Assembly (NCBI GenBank): GCA_002269645.1 | Contig: NIVC01001313.1 | Coordinates: 251,373-315,372, forward strand | Source: Macrostomum lignano | Lineage: Eukaryota | Reading direction: 5' to 3' | DNA length: 64,000 nucleotides | Part shown: positions 1-44,640 of the stretch, piece by piece | How the letters are laid out: the number at the start of each line of letters is the position of its first letter | How positions within the stretch are numbered: the stretch's first letter is position 1 | Translations under genes and position numbers: made by a program | The notes under the pieces: model-generated | Databases searched by the model: none | What the model was told of the DNA's origin: nothing | Seen by the model: only the letters and a program-made list of their open reading frames with translations

Positions 1-651
1 TTTCGATTGATGCTGTCGCTTTCTGGCCTGATTTTTAGGCACCTTTGGCTGCTTCTCCTTGACAAGCTTTGGTGGTTTCTTTGCTTTCTTGCTTACTTTC
101 TTGGCGCCTACCTTGATTTTTGGAGGTGGCGTCCAATAGCAACGATCGAATGCCTGTTTGGCTTCTTCGACAAACTGTAGCTGTTGAATTTTTGGCATTG
201 CGGTCAAAACAGCGTCTCGAATCACGGCCGTGTCGAGAGTAAACAGAATCCTGTAGTAGCCGCTCTTGTTTTTGTAATCCTCTACAGGCAGTCCGTTTTG
301 GTCGTACATTTTAAAGTCGTGAGCCAGCCCAAACGCTGCACTGTCACCTCCAAACGCTGGGTTGTAGCCCAGCAGAGCTAGACTTTCGCTGGAAAGGTGC
401 TCCGCCACAGTGTTGAAAGTGTAGGGTATGCAGCTTTCAATGTGTTTTTGTGCAATGATGATGAATTCGCGACCTTCGTTGTCAGTACGCACGCCCTTGA
501 CGATCAAAACAGGGACCGCATTGGCCAAGTAGAGAGGTCCCTGTTCGTCATATTCAATGTCAAACGTTTCAACCCCGTTGAAGCTCGGACCTCGCGGTTT
601 GAGTGCCAGCAGCTCTCGCTTGACGCAGTTGAAGTCTTGCACTGTCTCCAT
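1..651 (-). CDS. Uncharacterised Polinton protein, at least 217 aa, runs off the left edge; Lys-rich C-terminal part
   Basis: Hand translation from ATG 651 is stop-free to base 1: METVQDFNCVKRELLALKPRGPSFNGVETFDIEYDEQGPLYLANAVPVLIVKG...YWTPPPKIKVGAKKVSKKAKKPPKLVKEKQPK; absent from the ORF track because no stop lies in the window. Confidence 0.75.
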   Translation of the reverse strand, partial: METVQDFNCVKRELLALKPRGPSFNGVETFDIEYDEQGPLYLANAVPVLIVKGVRTDNEGREFIIIAQKHIESCIPYTFNTVAEHLSSESLALLGYNPAFGGDSAAFGLAHDFKMYDQNGLPVEDYKNKSGYYRILFTLDTAVIRDAVLTAMPKIQQLQFVEEAKQAFDRCYWTPPPKIKVGAKKVSKKAKKPPKLVKEKQPKVPKNQARKRQHQSK

Positions 652-697
652 GTCTCTTGTCTGTTTAGAAAAATTTGCAGGTACGGGCGCTTGCAGA

Positions 698-1547
698 CTA
701 ACTAACTAAGATAAGTGCTCCGGCGCCTCAGCCATTGAAATAGGCTCTTACGCCACTAGACTAAATGAGTTTCCTACTAGGGAGTGTACTAATGTACACT
801 AAAAGCCAAGTTAGACTATAGAGGACTGTACAGGGCTGAATAAAAAAAACCAAACCTCCCCGGGGGACAGTGACAGCGGAACGACATACCAGTCAGGAAG
901 CCCGTGCCCAAAAACCAGGTTTGATAGACTCCAGCCTATTAGGGGTGGCCCGAAGGCCTAGAGCCGTGGCTACCATGCTGGGGCCGACCGCCCACCACCC
1001 CCGGGTACAAATCATAAACCTCCCCGAGGCTAGAGGGAGAAGAGTGAACCATTCAGGGGAGCCCGTGCCTTCTCCTGGGTTAGATAGGCCAAAAATACCG
1101 GTCATAAGACCGCCCCCACGGCCGTGGCAACCCGAAGGAGCCTCCCCCCCAACTAAACCCCGGGTACTCTTGCCAACAGACAGTCTCTTATCTTTGAAGC
1201 GGCAGGAGGGCTAATCGCCGGGACTATTTCACCCTTTGCTTCGCCAACCCGCCATTTCTATTATGACCGTGCCAACGGTCTCGTCCTGCTCAGACTCAGT
1301 CCTGGTTCTGGCACACTCCAGCTTTAATAGGGTCGCTGGCTGTACGCTCAGAGGGCGCCTGAGGGATACCGTCAGAGCACCTTGGTACAGGTATAGGCCT
1401 GCCTTCCTATACAGCTACCCACAGCCCCTCCCGATCCACTATTACCCTCCAACCCAGCCTACTCACTCATTACAAGCTTTCAGCCAGGCAGAGACAAGTT
1501 TCACAGAAGTGACTGCGGTTAGGCGTCTCTATGCGAGACAAAACCAT
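698..1547 (-). mobile_element. ~850-nt non-coding structured insertion with 17-bp TSD and (TTAG)n 3' tail, probably retroposed
   Basis: GTACGGGCGCTTGCAGA is identical at 681-697 and 1548-1564; the minus strand ends ...CTTATCTTAGTTAGTTAG before the TSD; the paralogous promoter at 2335-2400 shows the uninterrupted state; many stems and two cUUCGg loops on minus. Confidence 0.75.
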
Positions 1548-1625
1548 GTACGGGCGCTTGCAGATGCTCCGGGCTGGTGCTTATATACCCGAGAGTCTCA
1601 ATAAGTTTTTGTTTTAATTACACGA
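1548..1625 (-). promoter_or_regulatory. Polinton promoter module with TATATAA box (1587-1581)
   Basis: Minus-strand AAACTTATTGAGACTCTCGGGTATATAAGCACC is repeated exactly at ~2371-2405, each time upstream of a minus-strand gene. Confidence 0.6.
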
Positions 1626-1906
1626 TAACGAGCTTTTTACAGAGTTGTCGTTATCGAGGATTCCGGAAAAAATGAACCTTTTGTTCCTATTTTCGGGTGC
1701 TGGCGTTGGAGGTGTGCTGAAATCCTTGCTCCAAGTTGCTGGTAGTTCAAGCTTTGGCGGCCTGTTCCTCTTGTGCTTGGGCAGCCAAAAATTCCAAATC
1801 TTTTGTTGCTCCTCCCACGACGGATTATACAGATCTTGATGGTTCCGAAAACGTATTTTTTGGCGATGCTCTTCACTTAGTATCGGAGCCAGTACGTTTA
1901 TCTAAT

Positions 1907-1953
1907 TGATTCTATTAGATTCTATTAGATTCTATTAGATTCTATTAGATTCT
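1907..1953. repeat. 10-bp tandem repeat (TCTATTAGAT)n
   Basis: About four copies visible directly. Confidence 0.85.
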
Positions 1954-1964
1954 ATTTATCTAAT

Positions 1965-2252
1965 CTATCGGAGCCTGTGTAGTCTTGTGGCTCGTAATCT
2001 CTCCATTCGTGCTAAATCAGCTTTGAATCTCATTTTGTCCCGTAGTTGCTCATTTATCCTGGCTGCTGCGTAGTCTTGGCTGTCGTAGGGGCCTTGATCA
2101 ATTTCCTCGACCTTGGCATTGAAGGTGACTAATCGCTCGGAAATCGGTTTGCTGTGGCAAATGCACAACCAGTCAGCAGATTTTTTCAAGGCCTCATATT
2201 CGTCTTTTTCCTCGTTCGATAATAGGGGGTAGTCTCCGGAAATCCAGCTCAT
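1965..2252 (-). CDS. Small orphan Polinton protein (95 aa), charged and helical
   Basis: ATG-started ORF downstream of the TATA module at ~2377. Confidence 0.5.
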   Translation of the reverse strand: MSWISGDYPLLSNEEKDEYEALKKSADWLCICHSKPISERLVTFNAKVEEIDQGPYDSQDYAAARINEQLRDKMRFKADLARMERLRATRLHRLR

Positions 2253-2408
2253 TTCTTGTCAAGCACTTGCTGCGTTGTTCGCACTAGTGGTGGGGATGTT
2301 ATTCGAGCTTGAAAAACTGCCGAGAATCCGAAAAAAAATTTGCAAGTACGGGTGCTTGGTGCCCCGGGTTGGTGCTTATATACCCGAGAGTCTCAATAAG
2401 TTTTTGTT

Positions 2409-2612
2409 TTAATTACAAGTTAACGAGCTTTTTACGGTGTTGTCGTTATCGAGGATTCCAGAAAAAATGAGACTTGTACCTATTTTCGGTGCTGGCGTTG
2501 GAGGTGTGTTGAAATCCTTGCTCAAAGTTGTTGGCAGTTCATGCTTTGTCGGTCTGATCCTCTTGTGCTTTGGCAACCAAAAATTGCTTGTCAAACACTG
2601 CGTTTTCCACAT
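2409..2612 (-). CDS. Small orphan Polinton ORF (67 aa); an ATG-less paralogue lies at ~1616-1895
   Basis: ATG start, TATAAAT on minus at ~2675-2681, conserved frame and stop in the paralogous copy. Confidence 0.4.
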   Translation of the reverse strand: MWKTQCLTSNFWLPKHKRIRPTKHELPTTLSKDFNTPPTPAPKIGTSLIFSGILDNDNTVKSSLTCN

Positions 2613-2844
2613 GATTGGGTTGTTAATTGAACTTGGTGAATTTAGATAAACGGCCGAGAATCCAAATTTTCTTATTTATAGTTTGCTGTCTGAACAAAAT
2701 TGGTTTGGCATTTACGAGAATATTTCATGCATAGAAGTTTGTGTTTTCAGACCTTGATGACGTGTCTGGCTATAAAGTTAGCATTGTGGCTCGACCGGGT
2801 TGTTGCGTAACACTGCTGCTGGTAGCTATAGCAGCCAGCGCAGG

Positions 2845-2927
2845 GCAGAGGGGTGGATAGCGGCGATTTACAGCGGCTGACTGACTCATCATGCCTCCGC
2901 GTGGGGCCGCCAATTAATTGTGGGAGG
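2845..2927 (+). promoter_or_regulatory. 83-bp block directly upstream of the TATA box of the structural gene cluster; exact second copy at 5994-6076
   Basis: Identical GCAGAGGGGTGGATAGCGGCG...TGACTCATC...AATTAATTGTGGGAGG in both places; the first copy is followed by TATAAATA. Confidence 0.7.
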
Positions 2928-2976
2928 TATAAATAAAGAAGTTTTCACGAATAAAAGGTAGCAACTGATCGACAAT

Positions 2977-3345
2977 ATGCCTTCAATCTTGATCGGAGGA
3001 GCTTTACCGGTATTTTCCGGTGCACAGCGCGGCAACGGCCTGTTTGGCAGCATTGCCCGATTTGCCCTGCCAATTTTAAAGAGTTTTGGCAAAAATATTC
3101 TTCGCCACGGAACACGAGCCCTAGCTACAACAGTTAGCGACACACTCGATCAAGGCGGGAACTTGAAAGAAGCAGCATTGCGTAACTCTGTCCAGGCAGC
3201 TAAAGATGCTTTCAAGGACACAGTCGCACAACGTGGTAGCGGCAGACAAAGACGAAGAAAGATGACTAGCAAAAAAACGAGAAAAAGACTGCAGCATTCT
3301 GATATTTTCGACTCTATAAATAAAAAAGCCCGTGCCAATAACTGA
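2977..3345 (+). CDS. Polinton/adintovirus small basic core protein (QRGxG motifs, Arg/Lys-rich tail; pVII/pX-like)
   Basis: LPVFSGAQRGNGLFGSIARFALPILK and QRGSGRQRRRK, immediately upstream of the MCP. Confidence 0.75.
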   Translation: MPSILIGGALPVFSGAQRGNGLFGSIARFALPILKSFGKNILRHGTRALATTVSDTLDQGGNLKEAALRNSVQAAKDAFKDTVAQRGSGRQRRRKMTSKKTRKRLQHSDIFDSINKKARANN

Positions 3346-3388
3346 TTTGTCTATTAGAGCACCACACTAAGCCGCTGTTGAAAGAAAA

Positions 3389-4672
3389 ATGACTGAGTGC
3401 CTGTGTACAAAGTCGGAATTCGAGCTATTTGCTCCTCGCGCACACCAAATTGCTGCAATTAGCGCCACCACTGAAGAAGTTCACCCTGTTGCCAGTGTTG
3501 AAAATGCCAGCGTGGTCGAATTTAGGATTGTTGGTGGTGAGACGTTTATCGATCTTAACGACATTGACCTCGAGATTAAGGCCCGCGTTAGGCAATCTAA
3601 TGGCACAAATCTTGCTGCTGATTCGAATGTTGCGCCGGTCAATTACGTCCTTGAAAGCATGTTTAAAAACGTCACGTTGACAATCAACGGGACACACGTA
3701 GAGTCGAGCAATAACAACCACGCTTACAAGGCCTATATTCGCACGTGTTTGAATTACGGACACGATTCAAAAACCAATCAACTGAGAATGATGGGCTACG
3801 CAAAGGACGCTGGAGGTCAAATGGCTGTGGTTGGAAATCCTGGCTTTGTAGCCCGCAAGGCGATGGCAGCAAACTCACGCACCTTTCACCTTTATGGACC
3901 TCTTAGTTTAGACTTTTTTGTTACCAACGACCGAATGCTACTGCCATACACTGATATGGTAATTACGCTGACCATGCACAATTCCGGCTTCGTTCTGGAA
4001 AACCACGCGGACGGGGTTGATGCGCGGCTAGTACTCGAGAGTGCCAAACTACATGTGCGCCGCGTCAAGGCAAACCCCCAATTGGCATTGGAGATTGAAG
4101 AACAACTAGGCAAACAGAATGCAATCTATCCGATTGAGCGACTTGTTGTGCACAATACTTCAGTGGCTGGCGGTGTTCGGGACATGTCAATCAACAATAT
4201 ATTTCCTGAACAAAAGCCTAAACTAGTGGTTGTTGGCATGGTAAACAGCGGCGCGTACAACGGTGTGGCTACACATAACCCGTTTAATTTTGAGCCATTT
4301 GGTGCCGACAGTGTGGCACTGTATAAGGACGGAGTCAGTCTGTGTGGACAACCGTTTACTCCTCGATTCGGTGTTCATAACTATGCTCGCGAGTATGCCA
4401 TGCTACTAAAAAGCCTAGGAAAGATGAATCGGGACCTGGATATTGACGTATCATATTCCGACTATGGAGCTGGCTACTGCTTCTTCGCCTGGAATCTCAT
4501 GCCCGACATGGAGCTGGGCGGGCATAGCATGCCTCGCGAGCGAGGGAATCTGACGCTACAAATAAAGTTTTCTGCTGCCTTGGCCGCAGGAATCAACGTG
4601 TTGGTGTTTGGCTACTTTGACAATACTGTGCAAATCACTCGCGGTCGTCAGGTTATTCTAGACTACGTGTAG
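3389..4672 (+). CDS. Polinton major capsid protein (PY, double jelly-roll)
   Basis: 427 aa; N-terminal KSEFELF...EEVHPVASVEN...EFRIVGGETFIDLNDIDLEIK, then HNPFNFEPF and C-terminal GNLTLQIKF...NVLVFGYFDNTVQIT, typical of Polinton MCPs. Confidence 0.9.
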   Translation: MTECLCTKSEFELFAPRAHQIAAISATTEEVHPVASVENASVVEFRIVGGETFIDLNDIDLEIKARVRQSNGTNLAADSNVAPVNYVLESMFKNVTLTINGTHVESSNNNHAYKAYIRTCLNYGHDSKTNQLRMMGYAKDAGGQMAVVGNPGFVARKAMAANSRTFHLYGPLSLDFFVTNDRMLLPYTDMVITLTMHNSGFVLENHADGVDARLVLESAKLHVRRVKANPQLALEIEEQLGKQNAIYPIERLVVHNTSVAGGVRDMSINNIFPEQKPKLVVVGMVNSGAYNGVATHNPFNFEPFGADSVALYKDGVSLCGQPFTPRFGVHNYAREYAMLLKSLGKMNRDLDIDVSYSDYGAGYCFFAWNLMPDMELGGHSMPRERGNLTLQIKFSAALAAGINVLVFGYFDNTVQITRGRQVILDYV

Positions 4673-4719
4673 AAACAAACATTTTTTTATTCTCAAATAA
4701 CGGCCATATTCATGCCGAT

Positions 4720-5169
4720 ATGAATAGTCTAGATATATTAGAACGTCTAATACTGCCTGTCCCTGTTCGAGTAACACCCGTTGACAGGATTCCGCAGCCT
4801 GTTTATCCTGCTGCATACGTGATTAACTTTGACACTGGCAATCTACCAGGCACTCACTGGGCTTTAATTTGTCTTCATGCCGATGAGAGCGTGACATTTT
4901 TTGACCCCTTGTGTATCGAACCTGTGCCAGATTTATTAAAGTTGTGGATCGCAAAGTATGTCTCCGCGGAGGTTGCAATGAACCGGCATCCTGTACAGCA
5001 TCCGCTAAGTGTGACCTGCGGGGCTCATGTAATATTTGTGGCTGAAAAACACTTTTTGGAGGGTCTGTCAATTGAAAAAATATTGCGCGACTGTTATAGC
5101 ACAAATCTTTACGAGAACGACTTGATGGTGCAGAATCACTGTCTACAAATAAAGCAGCATCATCCATAA
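4720..5169 (+). CDS. Adenain-like (C5) capsid maturation cysteine protease
   Basis: Catalytic His (GTHW), Asp (FFDP), Gln (VQHP) and Cys (TCG) in adenain order. Confidence 0.9.
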   Translation: MNSLDILERLILPVPVRVTPVDRIPQPVYPAAYVINFDTGNLPGTHWALICLHADESVTFFDPLCIEPVPDLLKLWIAKYVSAEVAMNRHPVQHPLSVTCGAHVIFVAEKHFLEGLSIEKILRDCYSTNLYENDLMVQNHCLQIKQHHP

Positions 5170-5171
5170 AT

Positions 5172-5822
5172 ATGATTGGGCGGCCTATCAAAATGTATCA
5201 AACAATAGACCCCGACTCTTTAAAATTTGCCCCCAAAACGTCTGCAATTTTTGCTGGGGTGGCTCAAAGCGGCAAGACCACACTTGTGAAAAACCTATTG
5301 AGACAAGAATTTTTTCAAGATCCGAAGCCGATTCGCGTAGACTGGTTTGGCCACTATCCGGATCCTGAACTGTTTGAATTGCCGTACCCTGTAAATTTTC
5401 GTTCGTGTACATTTGATCCTGAACAATATGTCCCTGACCCAAATATTCTGCTTGTCGTCGACGACCAAATGCATGCCATGGAAAAGAGTGGCGCTTTTAC
5501 AACTTTTTTCACGCGCAAAGTCTCCCACGTGGGGTTCCGACTTTGGTATCTTGTGCAAAACCTGTTTGCAAAGGGTAAGGAGCACCGAACTCAGTCGCTC
5601 AATTCGAACTACCTTGTTTTATTCCGCAATGTACGGGATGCCAGCACAGTGTCTCATATTGCAAGGCAGCTGGTCCCAACTAATCCAAAAAGTTTTGTCA
5701 AAACGTATGAGGATGCTACTCGCGACCCCTACTCATACTTGATTGTAAACTGTTTGCAAAATGCTCCTGCTCGCTATTATTCAAACGTTTTGGGTCGTCA
5801 CCCAATTGTGTATGCTAAATAA
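5172..5822 (+). CDS. A32/FtsK-like DNA packaging ATPase
   Basis: Walker A GVAQSGKT, Walker B LLVVDD, YLVQN and RTQSLNSNYLVLF motifs. Confidence 0.92.
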   Translation: MIGRPIKMYQTIDPDSLKFAPKTSAIFAGVAQSGKTTLVKNLLRQEFFQDPKPIRVDWFGHYPDPELFELPYPVNFRSCTFDPEQYVPDPNILLVVDDQMHAMEKSGAFTTFFTRKVSHVGFRLWYLVQNLFAKGKEHRTQSLNSNYLVLFRNVRDASTVSHIARQLVPTNPKSFVKTYEDATRDPYSYLIVNCLQNAPARYYSNVLGRHPIVYAK

Positions 5823-5879: not shown

Positions 5880-6480
5880 AAACTTATTTGACTCTGAGGA
5901 GGGGTTGGGTATGACGTAATTGCCCCGGAGTGGCTACGGAGGACAGAATTCTAGAGGGATGGAGTATGGTGTGAGTGGATATAACAGGCTGCAGCAGAGG
6001 GGTGGATAGCGGCGATTTACAGCGGCTGACTGACTCATCATGCCTCCGCGTGGGGCCGCCAATTAATTGTGGGAGGCAACAGAATATTTTCTTGGATGGG
6101 TGGGCGCTACAATTCTGTGCGTACACGAAGTTTGGGTTTGATCGAACAGCTATGGGGTGGGCGGACGCTACAATTCTGCCAATTTTTGGTATATGGACAG
6201 TAAATATGGACAAGTAATAATATGGACAGTTATGGGGTGGGTCGGCGCGCGTTAATTCTGCCAATTTTGGTATATGGACAGTTAATATGTACAGTTAATT
6301 CTGCGCTACACCAATGCTGCATTGTGCGGGGCTGGGGGCGCGCGCGTTTCTGCGTACAACAACTGCGGAGCGCTAATTATGCGTACTATATTGTACTGGT
6401 CGTCGCTTCTGTACGATACAGTGATTACATGTATAATTAGATTTACATGAGAGTATAAATGTCTCACATAATGACTCTGG
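5880..6480. repeat. Putative Polinton terminal (TIR) region with short internal repeats
   Basis: No convincing protein-coding ORF; repeated GGGGTGGG...AATTCTGCCAATTTT(T)GGTATATGGACAGT motifs; partner TIR not in the window. Confidence 0.5.
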
Positions 6481-8221
6481 ACCAATTAGAATCGGTCTAA
6501 TGTATTTAGATAGGCGCTGAATTTGCATTGGCTCTGACACCCACCTCACCTCCAAAACCCGGCTCTAACGGCGCGATACGTAGTTTCAATACATCCCTGT
6601 GCGCCAATCACTAGCCAAGCCTCCAAATTTCATATCAGCACGTCGACCACGTGTGTCTGCATCAGCGGCCTGATTTTATAGGTTATTGGCTTTCTCCCAT
6701 ACGGAGCTTCTGGACCTTCAACAGGTGGCCTTTTGTAGTCAAATTCTACAGATTTCGCTTGACTTATTTAGTTCAAGCGCAAATCTATCTAAAAAACGCT
6801 AAACTGACACTCAAATAAAAGTAGTGCGTCATTAAGAATCAGAGCGTAGCTATAATTAAACAAATCTATTGTTTCAATCGCCACTGTGAACAAATGTTTA
6901 TTTAATAACTTCTGAATTTACTATTGAAATATACTTTCAATTTTTTGCAACTGCATTCTAACAAGTTTTATTTGTCAGAAGTTGTCTAGATCAGCACTTC
7001 TAGTAAAAGTAATAGTTAAATTTCTATGAGGATCAATTAAGTGTTTTGCAACTGAATTCGTCCAACAAACTGCAAAATCTTTCGTTCGCTAATGCCTTCT
7101 TAATGGGAGCTAAATTAAGATCATGCCATACATAGACAGCTGCGTTCGCGCAAATGCAAAACATGATTGAAGTGACGGTTCGTTGGTTTGCTAGCATGGG
7201 TAACTGTGTGCGGTTTTTTGCTTAACTTTATTCTGCTAACTCAGTCACTTAACTTTATTCAATGCTAAACTTCTATGTACTCTGTAAACCAATGCGTACT
7301 CTGTGCAATTCAGTGTACATCATTGCTCTAGCCTTGCCTCGCCCCTTAAATCCCTCCACTTGCTCAATCATGCAGTGCATCAATATAGTTCAATACTCCA
7401 CTTCAATATTTTCAATAGTCGCAATATTTAAACCATTGCTCTCGATCTGTGTCTCGTCAAGCAACTTAGACAATTCTACTACTGCAAATATATCGCAAGA
7501 ATTTATACTCGTTCAAACAACATTCGATTCCTGACTTTCGCGTCACGTCAATGATGACAGTCCAGCAGAGACTTAAGGTGAGCGCGGGCCCCATCAAAGA
7601 TAATTCCACCCCACTCAGCCTCCACCAGAACATCCAGCTCTACTAATAAGTTTGCTAAATTTTCAGCTCAAAAACCTCCCCCCACAAATGCATAATTAAG
7701 AAGTCCCCATTGCAGAGATATGGGGCCAATCACAGAGTGGAGTTTTGTTTTAGCCACATACTGTTCTCACAGCAGGCTGCAACCTCGATGTGCCCATCTT
7801 TGAGTTCTCGCCGTCCAAAGGTTCAGCCCATGTAGGTACTCATCAAGAAAGATCAGGCTTCCATCGTGTACGTTCTTCGCACAGCTCCGAACGCAGCTGC
7901 TGTCTATGGAATTATCTAAATTTAGCTCCCGTTAAGAAAGCATTAGTGGTCGAAAGATTTTGTTGTATAGTTTGGAAGAATTCAATTGCAAAAAGTTATA
8001 TATGGTGGGTGCATTGCTGCAGTCACAGTTACAATGCAACAACCAACGCCCCATTGACACTAGTGTTATGTGGACATTGTTGCACGCGTTGTTGTTGCAA
8101 GTGCCTCATTATTGCATGCTGAGGGCTTGCTGTCTATGGCTGAACCCCACAGTGGTCTTGCTCTTGTTAACAATGTCATTCATGCAAAGCCGCAACGAAG
8201 TTTCATGCAGAATCGATCGGC

Positions 8222-10770
8222 CTACACAACCTCTTTGAACAGCGGCATGATGACCAAGATGATGAGGGTTGACGCGGACGCTGCCACCAGGAAGAGCCAG
8301 AACAGCATGCGATCCACGATGAAGGCCAGCATTCGCCAATCGTTGATGAGCAGCTGGGCGGCCTCATCCTCGGCCTGTTTGCGCATCAGGTAGCGCAGGT
8401 GCCGCTGCATCCGGTCGTACTGCCGGTAGCGCTTGTCCGCCTCCATCGTGGTTGACTTTCCTTCCACTCCGCCGCCGGAGCCGTTGCTGGCCTCCGTCTG
8501 AGCGGCGTCCGCAGCGGCGGAAACTTCTCGACGAGACTCCTCGTAGCGCTGGCGCCGACGGCCGGCCTTGCGCTGGTAGCGCGCCACGGACGACATGCAG
8601 AGCAGCGGCGCCAGCCGGTTGAACAGGAGGCTGCGCAGCTGCCGCGGCACCGGCCGGTCGTTCGGGCCAACATGGTGCAGGTGGAGCACGAATACGGTGA
8701 GCACGATTGACAGCGAGGTGGTCGACATGGTCACTGTCAGGTAGATGCCTGCAAGTGCGCGGCAGAAATTCTAATTGAGTCAAAGCTTCAGTTCAGACTT
8801 CTAAAATGCTACATAAAAACACTACCTTAAGACACGTAGAAGATCCATTATTAAATTAGCATAAAGTTTTGCATTTAGGGTTTTATTTCACGAGGAGAGA
8901 CTAAAGCACCGTGACTTCTATAATAATTCAGATGATGGCCCTATATCTCAAGGACGTTTGTCTGTAAATTTCTTCACTTTACATGTACGAGCGTAAACAA
9001 AAGGAGGTTAGCTGATAGTCTCACTTCCAATTACGAGGGGTGTCCCAAAAGTTCCCGGAATGTCTAACGTAGCTCTTCAACGGAGCCATGATGTTTCACG
9101 CCCTTGGTGTCATTATTCGATTTGTCTGTGGGTAAAAGCTTTTGGTAAGACATTTTCGCAGCGTATCGTTCACGGAAATGACAGTTCGGTAGACAAGACA
9201 ATGTCTATGGCTCAACCCGAATGAGAAAAAAATTTAAAGACGATAGAGTCAATGTACAGAAGCTAGTCACTGTACAGAGCTGATCAATGTACAGGAGCTA
9301 GTCAAGGCTACCGGACATTTTCCCTCCGGCATTTGCCCTCCGGACATTTGCCCTCCGGCATTTCCCCTCCGGACATTTGCCCTCGAGGACATTTGCCCTC
9401 GGGGACATTTGCCCTCCGGACATTTGCCCTCCGGACATTTGCCCTCGGGGACATTTCCCCTCTGGAAAAGTACAGGTAAGGCTGGGGATAGGGTAGGGCG
9501 CGGGTATATATTGCTTACTAGAAAAGGATGAGTTGTTGGCTGGAGAAGAACCTGATGGATGCAAGAGGCGGGAGGATGAGGTTGGTGCTGGAGGAACGAC
9601 GGGTGGGTACAGGAGGAGGTGAGGTGAGTAATGTGCGAGGGGGTAAATTTGCAGAGGGCAAATGTGCGGAGGGGAAATGTCCGGAGGGCAAATGTCCGGA
9701 GGGCAAATGTCCCCGAGGGCAAATGTCCCCGAGGGGAAATGTCCGGAGGGCAAATGTCCGGAGGGGAAATGTCCCGGAGGGCAAATGTCCGGAGGGCAAA
9801 CGCCGCCGAGGGGAAGTGCCGGAGGGCAAGTACCGGAGGGGAAGTGCCGGAGGGCAAATGTCCGGAAGCGGCTAGTCAATGTACAGAGCTGATCAATGTA
9901 CAGGAGCTAGTCACTGTACAGAGCTGATCAATGTACAGAATTGGCCAATGTACAGCGAGGTACAGTTCCCACTCCAATCAAAGCGCCTTTCTAAGTATTT
10001 CCCCAGAAACAATTTGTTTTGTTACCATAGCAACACAAGCCCGAGTGTCCATACTCACCGATCAGAGGCACGAACTCGCTAGTTGCCGGCATGTTCTCAG
10101 CTATGAGCAGCATAAACACTGAGAAGGCCAGCAGCACAGTGATGCCCAGAGTGATTTTCTCCCCTGAGTCGGGCGGCAGCCAGAATCCCAACAGGCTGAG
10201 CAGGGTGAGCCACAGGCAGGGAAAGATTATGTTGAACAGGTAGTACAGGGTGCGGCGCTGGATCACTATGTGGAACTTGATGTCCGGGTAGGGCACCGGG
10301 CTGATGGGGTAGACCGTCTGGAATTCGGACCCGGCGGGAGACCGGCTATTGTGCCATTTATGCAGCTGCAATAATGCCATTCTTATCCCTTGAAACTCCA
10401 CATGTTCCTCCTCTCTCCCTGTCCCTCACCCTGACTGTCTTTTTGCCTCTCCCTCTTCCTTCTCCCTCTCGCTCCCTCTCTGTCCCTCTCCGTCACCTTT
10501 ATTTCTCTCTCTCTCTCCGTCTCCCTCTCTCCCTCCCTCTCCCCCTCTCTCTCTCCCTCTCTCTCTCCCTCTCTCTCTCTCCCTCTCTCTCTCCCTCTCC
10601 CTCTCTCTCCCCTCTCTCTCTCCCTCTCCCTCTCTCTCTCCCTCTCTCTTTCTCTCCCTCTCTCTCCCTCTCTCTCCCTCTCTCTCTCTCCCTCCCTCTC
10701 CCTCTCTCTCTCTCCCTCTCTCTCTCCCTCTCCCTCTCTCTCCCTCTCTCTCTCCCTCTCTCCCTCTCCC

Positions 10771-10812
<42 letters not shown>

Positions 10813-13800
10813 TCCCTCTCCCTTACCCTCTCCCTCCTACTCATCTACTTTATATCCCTTGATGTTCTCTTTATCCCCTCTCCCTGCCAGTCTCAGTCCA
10901 TCTGTGATTAGCAAAACTGGGCTAATCACAGGCTAATAACTGGGCTAACACCATGGACGTCGCCAGCCTGTACACCAACATCCCGACGGAGGCCGGCCTC
11001 GAGTGCGTGCGAAGAGCGTTTAGGGAGCACCCGGACAGCCGGCGCCCAGACGCCAGCCTACTCAGCCTGCTCAAGCTGAACCTGGAGCGCAACGACTTCG
11101 AGTTTGACGGCAGGTACTTTCTGCAGGTGAAAGGCACTGCCATGGGGAAGTCGTTCGCGCCCAGCTACAGCAACATCTACATGGGCTATTGGGAGCAGAG
11201 AGGCCTGGAGACCAGCCCGCAGAAGCCCAGCCTGTGGCTCCGCTACATCGACGACGTCTTTGGAGTGTGGCGTGGCACAGAGGCGGAGCTGGTCCAGTTC
11301 CATCAACACCTGGACGCCCTCGACCCCAACATCCGACTTCAACTGAGCTACAGCAGCACAGAGGTGAACTTCCTAGACACCACCGTCTTCTGGGACCGCG
11401 AAGGCGACAGCAAAAGCCTGGCAACCAGGGTATATTTCAAGCCCACCGACAGCCGAGTCCTTATCCACCGCGACTCCTTCCATCCTAAGCGAACTTTCCG
11501 GGGCGTGGTAAAGTCCCAGCTCCTCAGGTACGCCCGGCGATGCTCCCGGATGGCCGACTTCGACGCAGCGTGCACCGGGCTGATGTCGAATCTGGTGCAG
11601 CACCAAGGCTACAGCCGGCGCTTCCTCCGCACCATCAAGTACGACGTGCTGACGGAGCTCGGCTTCTACCCGACCAGACGGTGGGAGTTCGGCTTCCTGC
11701 CGTGCAACTCGGCCCGACTCTGCAAGTGCTGCCAGGCGCACGCCAGGTTCACCTCCGTCTGCCCCGGATCAGCAGCCACGACAGTCCAGATCATCATCAG
11801 TCAGCGGATCGACTGCAACGCCACGAACGCCGTCTATGCCGTGTTCTGCCGCCGGTGCGACCACACGGTCTACGTCGGCGAGACCGCCAACAGCATCCGT
11901 GGTCGCATGCTGGCGCACATCGGTGACATCCGGCACACCCGTGACACTCCGGTAGCGCGCCACTTCACCAGCGGTGGCCACAGTCTGACGGACTTCGCCT
12001 TCACCGGCATCTGGACACGCGATGGCACAGGACCCAGAGCTGACGAGCGGCGTCAGCGCCAGGCCAAGTTTATCGAGGTCCTGAGGACTCATGTTCCACA
12101 CGGCGCCAACGAACTTGCCGGCATACTGCACAAACCGGCCATCCCGCTGATCCTGCCCCACTGTGCGACCTCCGACGCCCTGGCTGCCAAAGTGAAGGAC
12201 AGGGTGATACGCCACTGCGAGACCCCGGTGCTGCCCGCCTACACCAAGGGGAGAAGCCTCCGGACTCTGCTCTCTCATAGTCGGCTCGATCCTGCCAACT
12301 AGGCCCCTTTTGACGCCTGTACAAAGGCTCTTTTACTGCTATTTTTCCCCTCTGTGATTTTTTCATTGACTTTATTTTGATTTATTCAGATTATTTATTC
12401 TCTGCTTTTTATTCATTTTTCTGACACTGTGTACGGTGCACCTGCATTTTTTGCTCTGAGCATTTAATAATAGCTTTTATTTACCTTATCTATTTATTTT
12501 GCCATTTATTTTTACAATTTTTATTCTACACTCAAAGGTCGTCTAGGCCCACTTGTACAGTTTTAGCCACCCCCGCTTTTCTCATAGTCTCGGACTCGTT
12601 TTTATGTACTGACCATGCGTACTGTTTTAAGTGCTTGAGCACATCAATTTATCGATCGTCTCTCCCTGGCGATATCGCCTTTATATATTGATGGCAATTC
12701 GCGCCAAATAAACTTCACTCGCTTACAGCCCTGACGAAGAAATTTAATTTTGAAATATCGGCTACTCAATTTAAATTGACTTTTTTCAGTCCTTTCTGAC
12801 TTTCTACCGTGTCAGTGCCCGGGATTGGAGGCGCCCTCTCTCTCTCTCTCTCTCCCTCTCTCTCTCTCCCTCTCCCTCTCCCTTACCCTCTCCCTCCTAC
12901 TCATCTACTTTATATCCCTTGATGTTCTCTTTATCCCCTCTCCCTGCCAGTCTCAGTCCATCTGTGATTAGCAAAACTGGGCCAGAATCTGCGCTGCTCA
13001 CCTCCTGACGATCCACGTCGACTCGTAGCAGGTTCCACTCGCCGCTTTGCACGTAGTTGGCGAAGTCCACCTCTTCTCGTCTAGAATGGCGGATTTGAGT
13101 GCAGTGCTGAATGCGACTCAGACTCATATAGACTCAGACTCATATAGACTCAGACTCATATAGACTCAGACTCATATAGACTCAGACTCATATAGACTCA
13201 GACTCATATAGACTCAGACTCATATAGACTCAGACTCATATAGACTCAGACTCATATAGACTCAGACTCATATAGACTCAGACTCATATAGACTCTTTCT
13301 ACGCACAGTAATAGGATGCGTTCGTTAACTCACTTTTTAGTAATATTAACTTGATAACCATCGTAGGTCCACGATCCGAACTTCATCGTGCACACCTGAT
13401 CGTCAAACGGGAAATAGGTGATGTCGATTTTGCAGGTAGAACGCAGCTTAGCTGGCGGAGGCCAGAACACGGTGCCGCTTGAGTCCACCATCGCCTTGCT
13501 CTGCATGTAGCCTGTGGTGAAGTCGTCCGCGCTGCAGTTCATTGTTGAGGAGGATGGTGTAGGGAGCAATTCATATAGTGTAGGGACGGCGCCCCACAGC
13601 TATCCATACAGTGTAGGGACGGCGCCCCACAACTATCCATATATAGTGTAGGGATAGCGCCCCACAACTATCCATATATAGTTTAGGGATGGCGCCCCAC
13701 AGCTATCCATACAGTGTAGGGACGGCGCCCCACAACTATCCATATATAGTGTAGGGATAGCGCCCCACAGCTATCCATATATAGTGTAGGGACGGCGCCC

Positions 13801-16800
13801 CACAGCTATCTATGTATAGTGTAGGGATAGCGCCCCACAACTATCCATATATAGTGTAGAGATAGCGCCCCTCAACTATCCATATATAGTGTAGGGATAG
13901 CGCCCCACAACTATCCATATATAGTGTAGAGATAGCGCCCCTCAACTATCCATATATAGTGTAGGGATAGCGCCCCTCAACTATCCATATATAGTGTAGA
14001 GATAGTGCCCCTCAACTATCCATATATAGTGTAGGGATAGCGCCCCACAACTATCCATATATAGTGTAGAGATAGTGCCCCTCAACTATCCATATATAGT
14101 GTAGAGATAGTGCCCCTCAACTATCCATATATAGTGTAGGGATAGCGCCCCTCAACTATCCATATATAGTGTAGGGATAGCGCCCCTCAACTATCCATAT
14201 ATAGTGTAGAGATAGTGCCCCTCAACTATCCATATATAGTGTAGAGATAGTGCCCCTCAACTATCCATATATAGTGTAGGGATAGCGCCCCACAACTATC
14301 CATATATAGTGTAGAGATAGTGCCCCTCAACTATCCATATATAGTGTAGAGATAGTGCCCCACAACTATCCATATATAGTGTAGAGATAGCGCCCCTCAA
14401 CTATCCATATATAGTGTAGGGATAGCGCCCCACAACTATCCATATATAGTGTAGGGATAGCGCCCCACAACTATCCATATATAGTGTAGGGATAGCGCCC
14501 CACAACTATCCATATATAGTGTAGGGATAGCGCCCCACAACTATCCATATATAGTGTAGGGATAGCGCCCCACAACTATCCATATATAGTGTAGGGACGG
14601 CGCCCCACAACCATAGTAAAGAAAGTAATTTTCAAGCCACTGTAAATCTAGCCAAACAACAAACTTCAGAGCAATGAACTCCTTAAACTCCTTAAATAAT
14701 TGACTCTGAAAGTCAAACTCGCAACTCATATCTCTGTTAAATCCCGAACAGCTAACGGGGATCTGAGGAGAATATAAATTGACCCGCTAAGGCCAGACAG
14801 AGCCCCATAGATACGCCCCGGATACATAAACATAGAAAAGCCCTGGGCAATCGATCACCTTTCCTCTGGTCGGGATTTCAGAAGACGAAGCGTTCGGCTT
14901 GCCGAAAAAAAGAGTCATGCGCTTCCCAATGTAGTACCCATTATTTATCCCCAGATAGAGAAATCCCCAACTGAGATTTTTGCATATCTAAAATGCGACT
15001 GAAACTATATGAGCTGACAGTTGATAAATGCTCACAAAATGCTGCGGATATTTCTATTGTACTTTTTAGCAGATATATGATCTCACCGGTTGTACTAGTA
15101 CAGCACAATATCAGCATGATCTCACCTGTTGTACAGCACAATATCCGACATGATTTTACCTGGTGTACAGCACAATATAAGCATGATCTCACCGGTTGTA
15201 CAGCACAATATCAGCATGATCTCACCTATTGTACAGCACAATATCAGCATGATCTCACCTGTTGTACAGCACAATATCAGCATGATCTCACCTGTTGTAC
15301 AGCACAATATCCGGCAGCCAAATCTTCTGACAGGGCACGCGCAACACCTGCAGGCCATTGTAGTCGCTGGGATCCCAGTGCAGCCGTTCGTCCTGCCATT
15401 CCTGAATGCGACATGACGGAGGAAGTCCATGGTTATGCATGCAGTTACAGGCAGGTTCAGCCGACAGTCGACCCCTCAAGAAGGGTGTACAGCGGCCCAG
15501 ACTTTCATCCCAGTAAAGCCAGTGTACACTTTTTGCGCCTTGTGGGTTGGCCCTGATGGACGTGAATCACTCGAGATGCACGCGTCTAACATGGAAAAGC
15601 TACCTCATCATTTTCTCCATTTACTTTAATCCTCAAAGGCAAGTCTCACCTGTTCTAGCCAGACGTTGGTTGTAAGTACCTGGTTCACTTCATCCTGTAA
15701 AATCCAAAGGAAATTTTTAAAGACACTTCATACTCGTAGTATAAAATATGAATGAGCTGGTCTTCAGTGCCTAATGAGTAATCAAAACATTTTTTGTTCA
15801 CCTTTGCTTTGTCGAGATCATGTGTATGCAGGGACTTATCTGAGATCCCTACACACCCACTCGGCGCTACCTTTCTGCGTGAAGTACTGAAATTCACTCA
15901 CAGTCGTATTTAGTTAGCTGTGTGCGCGCTCGAATTCAAAATGGGGGATTCAACAAGCTCTCTATACGGTACTAAAAATGGTTCCATGATAAGACTCGCT
16001 CTGATAAATTTTTCTGCCTCAAATTTTCTACTCCTATCACGTGACTGGCACAGATGAAAACCACCTCAGTATGTTTCTGCCCCCCTGTCACGTGACTGGC
16101 ACAGATGAAAACCACCTCAGTATGTTTCTGCCCCCCTGTCACGTGACTGGCACAGATGCAAAACCACCTCAGTATGTTTCTGCCCCCTGTCACGTGACTG
16201 GAACAGATGTAAAACCACCTCAGTATGTTTCTGCCCCCTGTCACGTGACTGGCACAGATGAAAACCACCACAAGATGTTTTACCCCCTGTCACGTGACTG
16301 GCACAGATGAAAACCACCACAATATGTTTCGACCCCTGTCACGTGACTGGCACTGATAACAACCACCCAAATCACCCGGCCCAAGGAAGGGAAAGAAGGG
16401 GAGGGGAACCAACCATGTCCGCGATGAGGATTAGTGCAAAGCCGAACTTCACCATCACCTGGCTGGATGAGTTGAGCACAGGCCGGACGGCCGAGTCGTA
16501 TCCGGCCAGAATCCGCTTCATCAGGGCCTGCTCATCGGGTACCGGCGCTCCGGCACCAGCAGAACAAAAATTCGGGGGAGAGAAGTACGCATTAACGATG
16601 TCGCGTTGATTAGTAACTCACCAGCTGAGAGATTTGAATCAGAGCCAGCTGGAACCGGACTTCCACCGTGTTGCTGGCGTTAAACGTTGGCCTGGAGGCT
16701 GAGTCATAGTTCAGCATCAGCAGAGTGAGCAGTCGCTGCTCATCGGTACTGATATGCGGCATCGTCAGCTGCTGACAGCTGGCTGTCAAAGCGTAGTACC

Positions 16801-16867
16801 CTAGCAACGCCATAGCAACAAGCATGCCGCAACATTTCGCAGGCATGGCGCAATTTCTCTGGGGCAT
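8222..16867 (-). CDS. Nicotinic acetylcholine receptor subunit (Cys-loop, cation-type, lacking vicinal Cys), 7 coding exons, ~487 aa
   Basis: Exons 16867-16622, 15694-15650, 15401-15292, 13531-13334, 13080-13002, 10317-10059 and 8748-8222 join in frame with GT-AG ends; Cys-loop [25 protein letters not shown]2, TM4; true ATG is 16867 (the track start at 16891 is TTG). Confidence 0.93.
9034..9240 (+). mobile_element. Possible left-end fragment of a Tc1/mariner element
   Basis: TA|CGAGGGGTGTCCCAAAAGTT resembles mariner TIR starts; no right end seen. Confidence 0.35.
9306..9870. mobile_element. Non-autonomous foldback (MULE-like) element, 565 bp
   Basis: 9-bp TSD GCTAGTCAA at 9297-9305 and 9871-9879; inverted arms built from GGACATTTGCCCTCC subrepeats around an ~180-bp spacer. 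Confidence 0.8.
10430..10825. repeat. (CT)n/(CCT) polypyrimidine microsatellite (second copy ~17746-18141)
   Basis: Direct inspection. Confidence 0.95.
10953..12302 (+). CDS. PLE reverse transcriptase (C-terminal part) with GIY-YIG endonuclease
   Basis: [21 protein letters not shown], Cys linker [31 protein letters not shown]. Confidence 0.92.
   Translation: MDVASLYTNIPTEAGLECVRRAFREHPDSRRPDASLLSLLKLNLERNDFEFDGRYFLQVKGTAMGKSFAPSYSNIYMGYWEQRGLETSPQKPSLWLRYIDDVFGVWRGTEAELVQFHQHLDALDPNIRLQLSYSSTEVNFLDTTVFWDREGDSKSLATRVYFKPTDSRVLIHRDSFHPKRTFRGVVKSQLLRYARRCSRMADFDAACTGLMSNLVQHQGYSRRFLRTIKYDVLTELGFYPTRRWEFGFLPCNSARLCKCCQAHARFTSVCPGSAATTVQIIISQRIDCNATNAVYAVFCRRCDHTVYVGETANSIRGRMLAHIGDIRHTRDTPVARHFTSGGHSLTDFAFTGIWTRDGTGPRADERRQRQAKFIEVLRTHVPHGANELAGILHKPAIPLILPHCATSDALAAKVKDRVIRHCETPVLPAYTKGRSLRTLLSHSRLDPAN
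12727..12763 (+). ncRNA. Minimal type I hammerhead ribozyme of the PLE 3' end
   Basis: AGCC-CUGACGA-A-GAAAU(UUA)AUUUU-GAAA-UA-UC-GGCU: stem I AGCC/GGCU, intact core, palindromic AUAU stem III, as in dimeric PLE hammerheads. Confidence 0.8.
13113..13294. repeat. 16-bp minisatellite (GACTCAGACTCATATA)n filling nAChR intron 4 (copy at ~20430-20611)
   Basis: About 11 copies. Confidence 0.95.
13570..14612. repeat. 35-bp minisatellite, ~30 copies (copy at ~20887-21997 has two more units)
   Basis: Unit TAGTGTAGGGATAGCGCCCCACAACTATCCATATA. Confidence 0.95.
15078..15312 (-). repeat. 33-bp tandem repeat consisting of the nAChR exon 3 end plus its splice donor (copy at ~22463-22697)
   Basis: Minus-strand unit ATATTGTGCTGTACAACAG|GTGAGATCATGCTG, about 7 copies. 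Confidence 0.9.
16035..16355. repeat. ~51-bp minisatellite with palindromic GTCACGTGAC core, ~7 copies (copy at ~23420-23740)
   Basis: Direct inspection. Confidence 0.9.
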
Positions 16868-18086: not shown

Positions 18087-18128
<42 letters not shown>

Positions 18129-18238
18129 TCCCTCTCCCTTACCCTCTCCCTCCTACTCATCTACTTTATATCCCTTGATGTTCTCTTTATCCCCTCTCCC
18201 TGCCAGTCTCAGTCCATCTGTGATTAGCAAAACTGGGC

Positions 18239-26834: not shown

Positions 26835-32136
<5,302 letters not shown>

Positions 32137-44009: not shown

Positions 44010-44640
44010 ACCCCTCAAATGAAATGGCGCCCCTCACTCAGATGAAATAGCGCCCCCCACTCAGATGAAATGGCGCCCCTCACTCAATGAAATGGCGCCT
44101 CTCACTCAAATGAAATGGCGCCCCTCACTCAGATGAAATAGCGCCTCTCACTCAGATGAAATGGCGCCCCTCACTCAATGAAATGGCGCCTCTCACTCAA
44201 ATGAAATGGCGCCCCTCACTCAGATGAAATGGCGCCCCTCACTCAGATGAAATGGCGCCCCTCACGCAAATGAAATGGCGCCTCTCACTCAGATGAAATG
44301 GCGCCCCTCACTCAATGAAATGGCGCCTCTCACTCAAATGAAATGGCGCCCCTCACTCAGATCAAATAGCGCCTCTCACTCAAATGAAATGACGCCCCTC
44401 ACTCAGATGAAATAGCGCCTCTCACTCAGATGAAATGGCGCCCCTCACTCAATGAAATGGCGCCTCTCACTCAAATGAAATGGCGCCCCTCACTCAGATG
44501 AAATGGCGCCCCTCACTCAGATGAAATGGCGCCCCTCACGCAAATGAAATGGCGCCTCTCACTCAGATGAAATGGCGCCCCTCACTCAAATGAAATGGCG
44601 CCTCTCACTCAGATGAAATGGCGTCTCTCACTCAAATGAA
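44010..44640. repeat. 24-25-bp minisatellite (TCACTCAGATGAAATGGCGCCCC)
   Basis: About 25 copies. Confidence 0.95.

What the first reader, a model, noticed from the sequence alone, without database searches (positions are those of the whole stretch)
681..1564. TSD-flanked ~850-nt structured-RNA retroposon inserted at the transcription start of a Polinton gene
Seen in sequence: a perfect 17-bp direct repeat (681-697, 1548-1564) brackets a non-coding insert that ends in (TTAG)3 on the minus strand. The paralogous promoter at 2335-2400 (TATA...CCCGTAC-TTGCAAATTTTT) shows the empty site. The insert lies about 35 nt downstream of TATATAA (1587-1581) and upstream of the ORF at 651, so it would lead the viral transcript. 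The minus strand is packed with stems: GUCUC/GAGAC, GUAUAGG/CCUAUAC, CUGUAC/GUACAG, CUCAG/CUGAG, GACCGU/ACGGUC, AGUGUAC/GUACACU, and two cUUCGg loops. G-U pairs mostly favour the minus strand. Established: 10-20-bp TSDs with short-repeat tails mark LINE-mediated retroposition. Inference: a non-autonomous, non-tRNA RNA parasite of an endogenous virus. It has no pol III boxes and no convincing ORF, and I cannot place it in a known SINE class.
Basis: partly seen in the sequence, partly recalled or inferred. Interest (0 to 1): 0.88.

Follow-up and report, generated by a model that had tools for sequence, protein, structure and literature searches.

The report
Retroposon inserted in endogenous virus promoter
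An 850-base non-coding retroposon copy with a (TTAG)3 tail and a perfect 17-bp target-site duplication has landed between the TATA box and the start codon of a conserved gene of a Polinton/adintovirus-like endogenous virus. This is a clean but ordinary case of one mobile element nested in another, and the evidence that the RNA is specially structured is weak.

Summary
The sequence observation holds. A perfect 17-bp direct repeat (681-697, 1548-1564) brackets an 850-nt insert (698-1547). On the minus strand the insert ends in (TTAG)3. It has no terminal inverted or long terminal repeats, no ORF over 70 aa on that strand, no tRNA, no Rfam match and no pol III B box.

A paralogous promoter module (2334-2585) runs uninterrupted across the same point. 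Three related viral contigs have a TATATAA 31-45 nt upstream of the homologous gene's ATG and no insert. The insert therefore lies 33 nt downstream of the TATA box (1587-1581) and upstream of the conserved ATG (651), in sense orientation.

The host element is a double jelly-roll capsid virus of the Polinton/adintovirus kind. The capsid fold was predicted here, and a related contig carries an rve integrase.

The "packed with stems" claim is not supported. Whole-insert folding z-scores are -0.9 and -1.3, and the G-U strand bias reflects base composition. One structural signal remains: two diverged ~160-nt internal units share a strand-specific consensus fold.

No other copy could be found, so SINE-like element versus 5'-truncated LINE is unresolved, and "parasite of the virus" rests on a single insertion.

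Verdict: an ordinary retroposon insertion by target-primed reverse transcription, from an unclassified family.

The parts
698..1547 (-). The insert: an 850-nt non-coding retroposon copy, read 5'->3' on the minus strand. GC is 54% against 45.5% in the viral flanks.
   Evidence: Bounded by the 17-bp repeat and by the break in similarity to the paralogous module. No TIR (6/40 matches). No ORF >70 aa on the minus strand. No Rfam or tRNA hit. GC.
681..697 (.). Target-site duplication, the copy next to the element's 3' tail
   Evidence: Perfect 17/17 match with 1548-1564
1548..1564 (.). Target-site duplication, the copy next to the element's 5' end. It includes the predicted transcription start, about 25-35 nt downstream of the TATA box.
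   Evidence: The start-site position is an inference from the usual TATA-to-start spacing.
698..709 (-). (TTAG)3 short-repeat 3' tail
   Evidence: Single occurrence in the window. (TTAG)n tails are reported for SINEs Sbg8 and Sbg9 of Blattella germanica (PMC9191728).
783..800 (-). Perfect 7-bp hairpin (AGTGTAC / GTACACT, 4-nt loop) in the 3' region, about 75-90 nt from the 3' end. It is a candidate recognition stem for a partner reverse transcriptase.
   Evidence: Read in the sequence. The role is inference only. The 3' 150 nt fold no better than shuffles.
842..849 (-). Run of 8 T on the element strand. It would terminate pol III and separates the repeated units from the 3' region.
1009..1170 (-). 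Internal unit A (element positions 378-539), paralogous to unit B
   Evidence: Alignment score z about 10 against shuffles, 0/1000. 53% identity. Shared consensus fold.
842..1010 (-). Internal unit B (element positions 538-706)
   Evidence: As for unit A
1581..1587 (-). TATATAA box of the interrupted viral gene. It is palindromic, so it could also serve the + strand small ORF at 1672-1839.
   Evidence: Homologous genes in L010, L011 and L012 each have TATATAA 31-45 nt upstream of the conserved ATG.
1..651 (-). Conserved viral gene of unknown function whose leader carries the insert. 217 codons are visible and the gene is cut by the window start. It is open throughout the visible part.
   Evidence: Homologs at 52-56% identity start at the same Met. 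No Pfam or NCBIfam hit. The AF2 model has low confidence (pLDDT 45).
2334..2585 (.). Paralogous promoter module, uninterrupted at the equivalent point. It lies upstream of the 95-aa gene at 2252-1965.
1965..2252 (-). 95-aa viral ORF upstream of the interrupted gene, in the same order as in related contig L011
   Evidence: window 2246-2146 matches L011 1773-1873
2977..3345 (+). 122-aa basic ORF conserved upstream of the capsid gene. Its function was not tested.
   Evidence: 69% identical to the equivalent ORFs of L001 and L002
3389..4672 (+). Major capsid protein with a double jelly-roll fold, 427 aa, open
   Evidence: AF2 pLDDT 85.9. Foldseek matches, E down to 1e-20, to capsid proteins of giant viruses, virophages, adomaviruses and an adintovirus. 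The top hit is a bracovirus-borne protein. Relatives at 78-81% identity have the same length.
4720..5169 (+). 149-aa ORF in the position of the maturation protease. It has His and Cys-Gly motifs by eye only.
   Evidence: 69-72% identical to L001 and L002 ORFs. No Pfam hit. The protease assignment is inference.
5172..5822 (+). 216-aa P-loop NTPase, the putative packaging ATPase
   Evidence: Walker A (GKT) read in the translation. Only sub-threshold P-loop Pfam hits. 85% identical to the L002 ORF.

Best explanation
The insert is one copy of a non-LTR retroposon family with a (TTAG)n 3' tail. It was placed by target-primed reverse transcription. The mechanism is inferred as follows. An endonuclease nicked the + strand after base 697. 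The freed 3' end primed reverse transcription on the RNA's tail. A second nick 17 bp away on the other strand produced the 17-bp duplication.

The copy is either a non-autonomous element or a 5'-truncated 3' part of the partner LINE itself. These tools cannot separate the two.

The insert landed, in sense orientation, in the 62-nt interval between the TATA box and the conserved ATG of a gene of an endogenous Polinton/adintovirus-like virus. It starts about 5-15 nt downstream of the predicted transcription start. Any transcript from that promoter would now begin with the whole retroposon. That adds 867 nt and nine upstream ATGs, each with a short uORF, ahead of the viral ORF. The most likely effect is loss or strong reduction of that gene's expression.

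Nothing indicates that the site was targeted. This is most simply a chance insertion into a germline-resident viral copy.
For: SHOWN:
- Perfect 17-bp TSD exactly at the edges of the discontinuity against the paralogous module.
- (TTAG)3 abuts the TSD.
- No TIR or LTR.
- No ORF, tRNA, Rfam family or pol III boxes.
- An internal T8 run.
- Insert GC is 54% against 45.5% in the flanks.
- Homologs of the downstream gene start at the same Met. They have TATATAA 31-45 nt upstream and no insert in L010, L011 and L012.
- Nine upstream ATGs with uORFs of 3-70 codons.
- (TTAG)n tails are documented for SINEs (PMC9191728).

FROM ESTABLISHED KNOWLEDGE:
- LINEs of the CR1/L2/RTE type end in short tandem repeats. 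They mobilise RNAs that share their 3' end. They give TSDs of variable length.
Against: - No second copy and no partner LINE were found. None is in the window. The translated-ORF search of the protein collection found nothing. The JGI and IMG/VR pattern scans gave only chance hits or none. The repetitive, mobile nature of the sequence is therefore inferred from insertion hallmarks alone.
- The tail has only three units.
- The promoter's direction and the start site are predicted, not measured. The palindromic TATATA could also serve the small + strand ORF at 1672-1839.
Confidence: 0.78

Rival explanations
1. The insert belongs to a dedicated, highly structured, non-autonomous RNA retroposon family that preferentially targets this viral promoter motif. 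It would use the viral TATA promoter as its own transcription source.
For: - Sense orientation, with the 5' end about 5-15 nt from the predicted start site.
- No internal pol III promoter.
- Two paralogous ~160-nt units share a strand-specific consensus fold. The alifold energy is -39.95 against -20.4 +/- 4.1 for column shuffles (z -4.8, 0/300). The reverse complement gives z -0.5.
- Element positions 1-150 fold better than shuffles (z -2.6).
Against: - Whole-insert and per-unit folding energies are not better than dinucleotide shuffles: z -0.9 for the insert, -0.7 and -1.6 for the units.
- The number of compensatory pairs between the units (9) is within chance (7.4 +/- 2.3).
- The column shuffles do not preserve dinucleotides, and the conserved palindromic CCCGGG blocks favour a closing stem.
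- The second copy of the promoter module is empty.
- Only one insertion is known, so targeting cannot be claimed.
Confidence: 0.1
2. The insert is a non-autonomous derivative of a Penelope-like element or a retrozyme-type repeat. It would have been mobilised by the Penelope-like reverse transcriptase seen at 10953-12302 and 18269-19618.
For: - A probable Penelope-like ORF lies in the same window. Evidence is a weak RT hit and a GIY-YIG-like motif seen by eye.
- The insert contains two tandem ~160-nt units, reminiscent of tandem retrozyme units.
Against: - No hammerhead ribozyme or any other ribozyme family at E<=10.
- No pseudo-LTR or tandem/inverted arrangement and no 30-40-bp extension, the features described for such elements in PMC8557442.
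- No similarity between the insert and the rest of the window.
- A short-repeat 3' tail with a clean TSD is the LINE-type signature.
Confidence: 0.05
3. The insert is not a retroposition. It would be host or foreign DNA captured during double-strand-break repair or viral recombination, with the 17-bp repeat arising from fill-in of staggered ends.
For: The segment is single-copy as far as could be seen. Its GC content differs from that of the virus.
Against: - The short-repeat tail sits exactly at one junction.
- The clean 17-bp duplication with no deletion at the site is the standard signature of target-primed reverse transcription.
- Filler-DNA captures rarely combine both features.
Confidence: 0.04
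4. The segment is a native long leader or regulatory region of the virus, and the 17-mer is a recurring promoter motif.
For: The 17-mer region is part of a promoter module that occurs twice in the element.
Against: - The paralogous module contains the motif once, with nothing between its halves.
- Three related contigs have 31-45 nt between TATA and ATG.
- The insert has no similarity to any related viral contig.
Confidence: 0.02

Closest known systems
Retroposons mobilised by 'stringent' LINEs of the CR1/L2/RTE type, which end in short tandem repeats (for example the eel UnaL2/UnaSINE1 pair; from my own knowledge)
   Same: A short-repeat 3' tail directly abuts a variable-length TSD. There is a hairpin in the last ~100 nt. 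There are no terminal repeats. 5' truncation is possible.
   Different: No partner LINE or second copy could be retrieved. At 850 nt, with no tRNA, 5S or 7SL head and an internal T8 run, it does not fit a classical pol III SINE.
Blattella germanica SINEs Sbg8 and Sbg9 (PMC9191728)
   Same: They carry perfect (TTAG)n tails.
   Different: The only shared feature is the tail motif. No sequences were compared. The host here is an unidentified animal. Those SINEs are short pol III elements.
Non-LTR retrozymes and non-autonomous Penelope-like elements (PMC8557442; bioRxiv 10.64898/2026.07.22.740005)
   Same: Non-coding, with tandem internal units of ~160 nt. A Penelope-like ORF is present in the same window.
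   Different: No hammerhead motif. No pseudo-LTR or tandem/inverted insertion architecture.
Polinton/Maverick elements and adintoviruses (the host element; from my own knowledge of the family's gene set)
   Same: Double jelly-roll capsid. A conserved capsid / putative protease / P-loop ATPase block. An rve integrase on related contig L010. A Bcl-2-domain gene on related contig L011.
   Different: No polymerase, integrase or terminal repeats are visible in the window, because the element is cut by the window start. The order and orientation of the two gene blocks differ from L010.

Membership tests
Non-LTR retroposon insertion by target-primed reverse transcription | Flanking target-site duplication of variable length (about 5-20 bp) | tested here: met
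   17/17 identical at 681-697 and 1548-1564
Non-LTR retroposon insertion by target-primed reverse transcription | A-rich or short-tandem-repeat 3' tail abutting the TSD | tested here: met
   (TTAG)3 at 698-709 on the minus strand
Non-LTR retroposon insertion by target-primed reverse transcription | No terminal inverted repeats or LTRs | tested here: met
Non-LTR retroposon insertion by target-primed reverse transcription | An uninterrupted (empty) version of the site exists | tested here: met
   Paralogous module 2334-2585. Homologous promoters in L010, L011 and L012. These are paralogs and relatives, not an allelic empty site.
Non-LTR retroposon insertion by target-primed reverse transcription | Dispersed further copies, and a LINE sharing the 3' end | not testable with these tools
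   The host genome is not in the collections. The window, protein-collection, JGI and IMG/VR searches found nothing real.
Classical SINE (pol III) | tRNA-, 5S-, 7SL- or snRNA-derived head with an internal promoter | tested here: not met
   No ARAGORN or Rfam hit. No B box. One A-box-like site at chance frequency near the 3' end.
Classical SINE (pol III) | No internal pol III terminator | tested here: not met
   T8 run at 842-849 on the element strand
5'-truncated LINE copy | Similarity to a LINE ORF2 C-terminus or 3' UTR | not testable with these tools
   No repeat library is available. No minus-strand ORF >70 aa. The ORFs tested elsewhere in the window contain no LINE reverse transcriptase.
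Retrozyme / non-autonomous Penelope-like element | Hammerhead ribozyme; pseudo-LTR or tandem insertion architecture | tested here: not met
   No ribozyme family at E<=10. A single unit with a clean TSD.
Structured functional RNA | Folding energy below that of shuffled sequence, or covariation | tested here: inconclusive
   Whole-insert z is -0.9 and -1.3. The two units share a fold (z -4.8, strand-specific), but the compensatory count is within chance.
Polinton/Maverick-adintovirus (host element) | Double jelly-roll major capsid protein | tested here: met
Polinton/Maverick-adintovirus (host element) | rve-family integrase | tested here: inconclusive
   Not within the window. Present on related contig L010, between the homolog of gene 651->1 and the capsid gene.
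Polinton/Maverick-adintovirus (host element) | Protein-primed family B DNA polymerase; terminal inverted repeats with a short TSD | not testable with these tools
   The element runs off the window start. Only one end region (about 5.8-7 kb) is in view.
Polinton/Maverick-adintovirus (host element) | Packaging ATPase and adenain-like protease | tested here: inconclusive
   P-loop motifs and sub-threshold Pfam hits for 5172-5822. Protease motifs seen by eye only. Both ORFs are conserved in relatives.

The most novel reading that the evidence does not exclude
The insert represents an undescribed family of promoter-less retroposons of about 850 nt. They would be built around two structured ~160-nt domains and would gain transcription by landing just downstream of TATA boxes of endogenous Polinton-like viruses. 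The viral promoter would then produce a near-exact full-length element RNA.
Probability: 0.06. Interest if true: 0.6.

Novelty: new member of a known kind. Interest (0 to 1): 0.25.

Why it matters
The insertion shows that this viral copy resides in the host germline. It also shows that a retrotransposition machinery using a (TTAG)n tail acted after the virus integrated. The TSD is still perfect and the visible viral ORFs are open, so both events look recent. The insert probably uncouples one conserved viral gene from its promoter. It also gives a convenient presence/absence marker for dating and tracing this viral lineage. Beyond that, it is an ordinary nested-transposon case. It would become more interesting only if further copies showed a preference for such promoters or real covariation in the two internal domains.

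Tried and rejected
- Rfam at gathering threshold over the window, and at E<=10 over 600-1700. Only a spurious lncRNA-model match and a sub-threshold sRNA hit outside the insert.
- ARAGORN found no tRNA.
- Generic A-box and B-box pattern scans gave chance-level counts.
- BLASTN of the insert against the window found no other copy.
- The longest reading frame of the insert (+ strand, one stop marked X) was searched against the 5.8-billion-protein collection, in the hope that spurious ORF calls from other copies would show up. No hit.
- A pattern built from the two blocks conserved between the internal units was scanned over JGI metagenomes and IMG/VR. It gave 6 + 1 hits, but only the specified bases matched, so these are chance.
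- Two 3'-region motifs scanned over IMG/VR gave nothing.
- Six motifs searched in full-text papers returned one unrelated paper.
- Exact-protein look-ups of the capsid ORF and of a 942-aa host ORF showed the host assembly is not on record.
- Pfam and NCBIfam found nothing significant for the viral ORFs.
- A PDB sequence search with the ATPase found nothing significant.
- The structure prediction of the interrupted gene's product had low confidence (pLDDT 45), so no fold search was run on it.
- A literature search for the name a source gives the capsid homologs found nothing.

Full report
OBSERVATION

The 17-mer GTACGGGCGCTTGCAGA occurs at 681-697 and again at 1548-1564. In the first 8 kb it is the only 17-mer pair that is not part of the longer paralogous promoter module. 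About 0.12 such pairs are expected by chance in 64 kb.

The 850 nt between the two copies (698-1547) begin on the + strand with CTAACTAACTAAG. On the minus strand the segment therefore ends in (TTAG)3, the only such run in the window.

The ends of the insert are not inverted repeats (6 of 40 positions match). No LTR-like repeat was found.

The insert is 54% GC, against 45.5% for the flanking viral sequence.

EMPTY SITE

The module 2334-2585 matches the left flank (669-693, 92%) and the right flank (1545-1793, 88%). In a three-way alignment it runs without interruption across the point where the insert sits. The 17-mer region is present once in that module.

WHAT THE INSERT IS NOT

- Rfam gives nothing at gathering thresholds over the whole window. 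At E<=10 over 600-1700 it gives only a meaningless lncRNA-model match.
- ARAGORN finds no tRNA.
- Generic pol III A-box and B-box patterns occur at chance frequency in the window. There is no B box in the insert, and the single one-mismatch A-box-like site lies near its 3' end.
- A run of eight T on the element strand (842-849) would stop pol III.
- The longest minus-strand ORF is 70 aa.
- The + strand has two longer ORFs in one frame. Their translation is low-complexity and found no relative among 5.8 billion proteins.
- No hammerhead or other ribozyme family was detected.

STRUCTURE

- The minus-strand MFE is -330.6 kcal/mol, against -322.6 +/- 8.8 for dinucleotide shuffles (z -0.92).
- The plus strand gives z -1.30.
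- The roughly 57 kcal/mol advantage of the minus strand is reproduced by the shuffles. It reflects 56.7% G+T on that strand, not selection for G-U pairs.
- In 150-nt sliding windows, only element positions 1-150 on the minus strand stand out (z -2.6, 0/100). That is one of 30 tests.

One feature is real. The insert contains two paralogous ~160-nt units, at window 1009-1170 and 842-1010 on the minus strand. They are 53% identical, and the alignment score has z about 10 against shuffles (0/1000).

The two units share a consensus fold closed by a ~19-bp stem between their ends.

- The alifold energy (-39.95) lies far below column-shuffled alignments (-20.4 +/- 4.1, 0/300).
- The reverse complement does not show this (z -0.5).
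- However, the count of compensatory pairs (9) is within chance (7.4 +/- 2.3).
- The individual units fold no better than dinucleotide shuffles (z -0.7 and -1.6).
- The shuffle used does not preserve dinucleotides.
- The conserved blocks include the palindrome CCCGGG.

I rate this as suggestive only.

WHERE IT LANDED

The minus-strand ORF starting at 651 runs off the window start, with 217 codons visible. It has homologs at 52-56% identity that start at the same Met.

Three contigs carrying them were read.

- L010 also carries an rve integrase and, further on, the capsid gene.
- L011 has Bcl-2- and Fic-domain genes next to the homolog.
- L012 is the third.

In all three, a TATATAA lies 31-45 nt upstream of the conserved ATG, with nothing like the insert in between. 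The insert has no similarity to any of these contigs.

In the window, TATATAA is at 1587-1581 on the minus strand, and the insert's 5' end follows 33 nt later. With the usual spacing of about 25-35 nt between a TATA box and the start site (established knowledge; not measured here), the insert begins about 5-15 nt into the transcript, in sense orientation.

As the sequence stands, 929 nt separate the TATA box from the ATG. The insert contributes nine upstream ATGs with uORFs of 3-70 codons.

The TATATA core is palindromic. A small hydrophobic + strand ORF at 1672-1839, with a paralog at 2467-2649, lies on the other side. The promoter may therefore be bidirectional. For that ORF, the insert would lie just upstream of the TATA box.

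THE HOST ELEMENT

The 427-aa ORF at 3389-4672 has no Pfam hit. Its AlphaFold model is confident (pLDDT 85.9). It matches double jelly-roll capsid proteins of giant viruses, virophages, adomaviruses and an adintovirus, and, best of all, a bracovirus-borne protein.

Relatives at 78-81% identity have the same length. They sit in the same block of small basic ORF, capsid, 149-aa ORF and P-loop ATPase.

No polymerase, integrase or termini are in view, because the window starts inside the element. "Polinton/Maverick or adintovirus-like endogenous virus" is therefore the supported label, and full family membership is untested.

All viral ORFs compared with relatives are open over the matched length: zero stops and zero frameshifts seen. 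The only disruption seen is the single insertion in the leader of one gene.

The function of that gene remains unknown. There are no family hits, and its structure model has low confidence.

MECHANISM

The TSD, the short-repeat tail at one junction, the lack of terminal repeats and the uninterrupted paralog together are the standard signature of target-primed reverse transcription by a LINE of the kind that ends in short tandem repeats. This comes from established knowledge of the CR1/L2/RTE-type elements and the SINEs they mobilise.

(TTAG)n tails are documented for two cockroach SINEs (PMC9191728).

The following steps are inferred.

1. A nick on the + strand after base 697.
2. Priming on the RNA tail.
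3. A second nick 17 bp away on the other strand.

The perfect hairpin at 783-800 is a candidate recognition stem, which is also inference.

These tools could not decide whether the copy is a discrete non-autonomous element or a 5'-truncated LINE 3' region.

A Penelope-like origin was considered, because a probable Penelope-like ORF is present twice in the window (10953-12302 and 18269-19618). However, the architecture described for such elements is absent: pseudo-LTRs, tandem/inverted copies, 30-40-bp extensions and hammerheads (PMC8557442).

VERDICT

The emphasis on a "structured RNA" and on parasitism of the virus is not.

This is a clean, probably recent, ordinary nested insertion of an unclassified retroposon into the promoter-leader of a gene of an endogenous Polinton-like virus.

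Noticed in passing
window 2845-2927 and 5994-6076: An 83-bp perfect direct repeat brackets the capsid / 149-aa ORF / ATPase block. The first copy abuts the TATAAATA upstream of the 122-aa ORF. The second lies about 170 nt after the ATPase stop. The origin is unexplained; it could be a recombination or duplication junction, or a shared regulatory or terminal sequence.
   Followed up: no
window 1672-1839 and 2467-2649 (+): Paralogous small hydrophobic ORFs of about 55-60 aa lie on the other side of each palindromic TATATA box. The two copies differ by small indels that keep the frame. They may be real divergently transcribed genes.
   Followed up: partly
window 10446-17760 and 17762-25076: A ~7.3-kb tandem segmental duplication. 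Each copy carries a 449-aa ORF with a weak reverse-transcriptase hit and a GIY-YIG-like C-terminus seen by eye, so it is a probable Penelope-like element. Long (CCTCTC)n arrays and several minisatellites are also included.
   Followed up: partly
window 8222-8734 (-), 9991-10401 (-), 36701-37453 (-), 48063-52076 (-), 54072-55196 (-), 56959-57642 (-), 59392-61731 (-): Exon-like ORFs of animal host genes: neurotransmitter-gated ion channel, protein kinase, N-SET/SETD1-like plus RRM, Kelch, RIC3 and eIF3e. The window is therefore an animal chromosome with the viral element at its left edge.
   Followed up: partly
L011 48-1579 (related viral contig, Logan SRR23592405): A relative of the virus carries Fic-domain and Bcl-2-domain genes next to the homolog of the interrupted gene.
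   Followed up: no
L010 versus window 1-5822: In related contig L010, the homolog of gene 651->1, an rve integrase and the capsid gene are all on one strand. In the window, the two blocks diverge from the 2250-2980 region. Gene-block orientation therefore differs between relatives.
   Followed up: no
window 7044-7148 and 7888-7993: An inverted repeat of ~105 nt at 82% identity lies between the viral end region and the first host exon. It may be a small foldback or MITE-like element.
   Followed up: no
window 13573-14611, 20890-21996, 27283-27572, 30933-31927, 34230-35593, 41416-42439, 44014-44640, 55491-56276, 57870-58383: An unusually dense set of long minisatellite arrays, with periods of 4-55 nt and up to 1.4 kb each.
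   Followed up: no
window 42753-42763 (-) and 61217-61227 (-): Two perfect matches to the generic pol III B-box pattern, although ARAGORN calls no tRNA. They could be SINE heads or chance.
   Followed up: no
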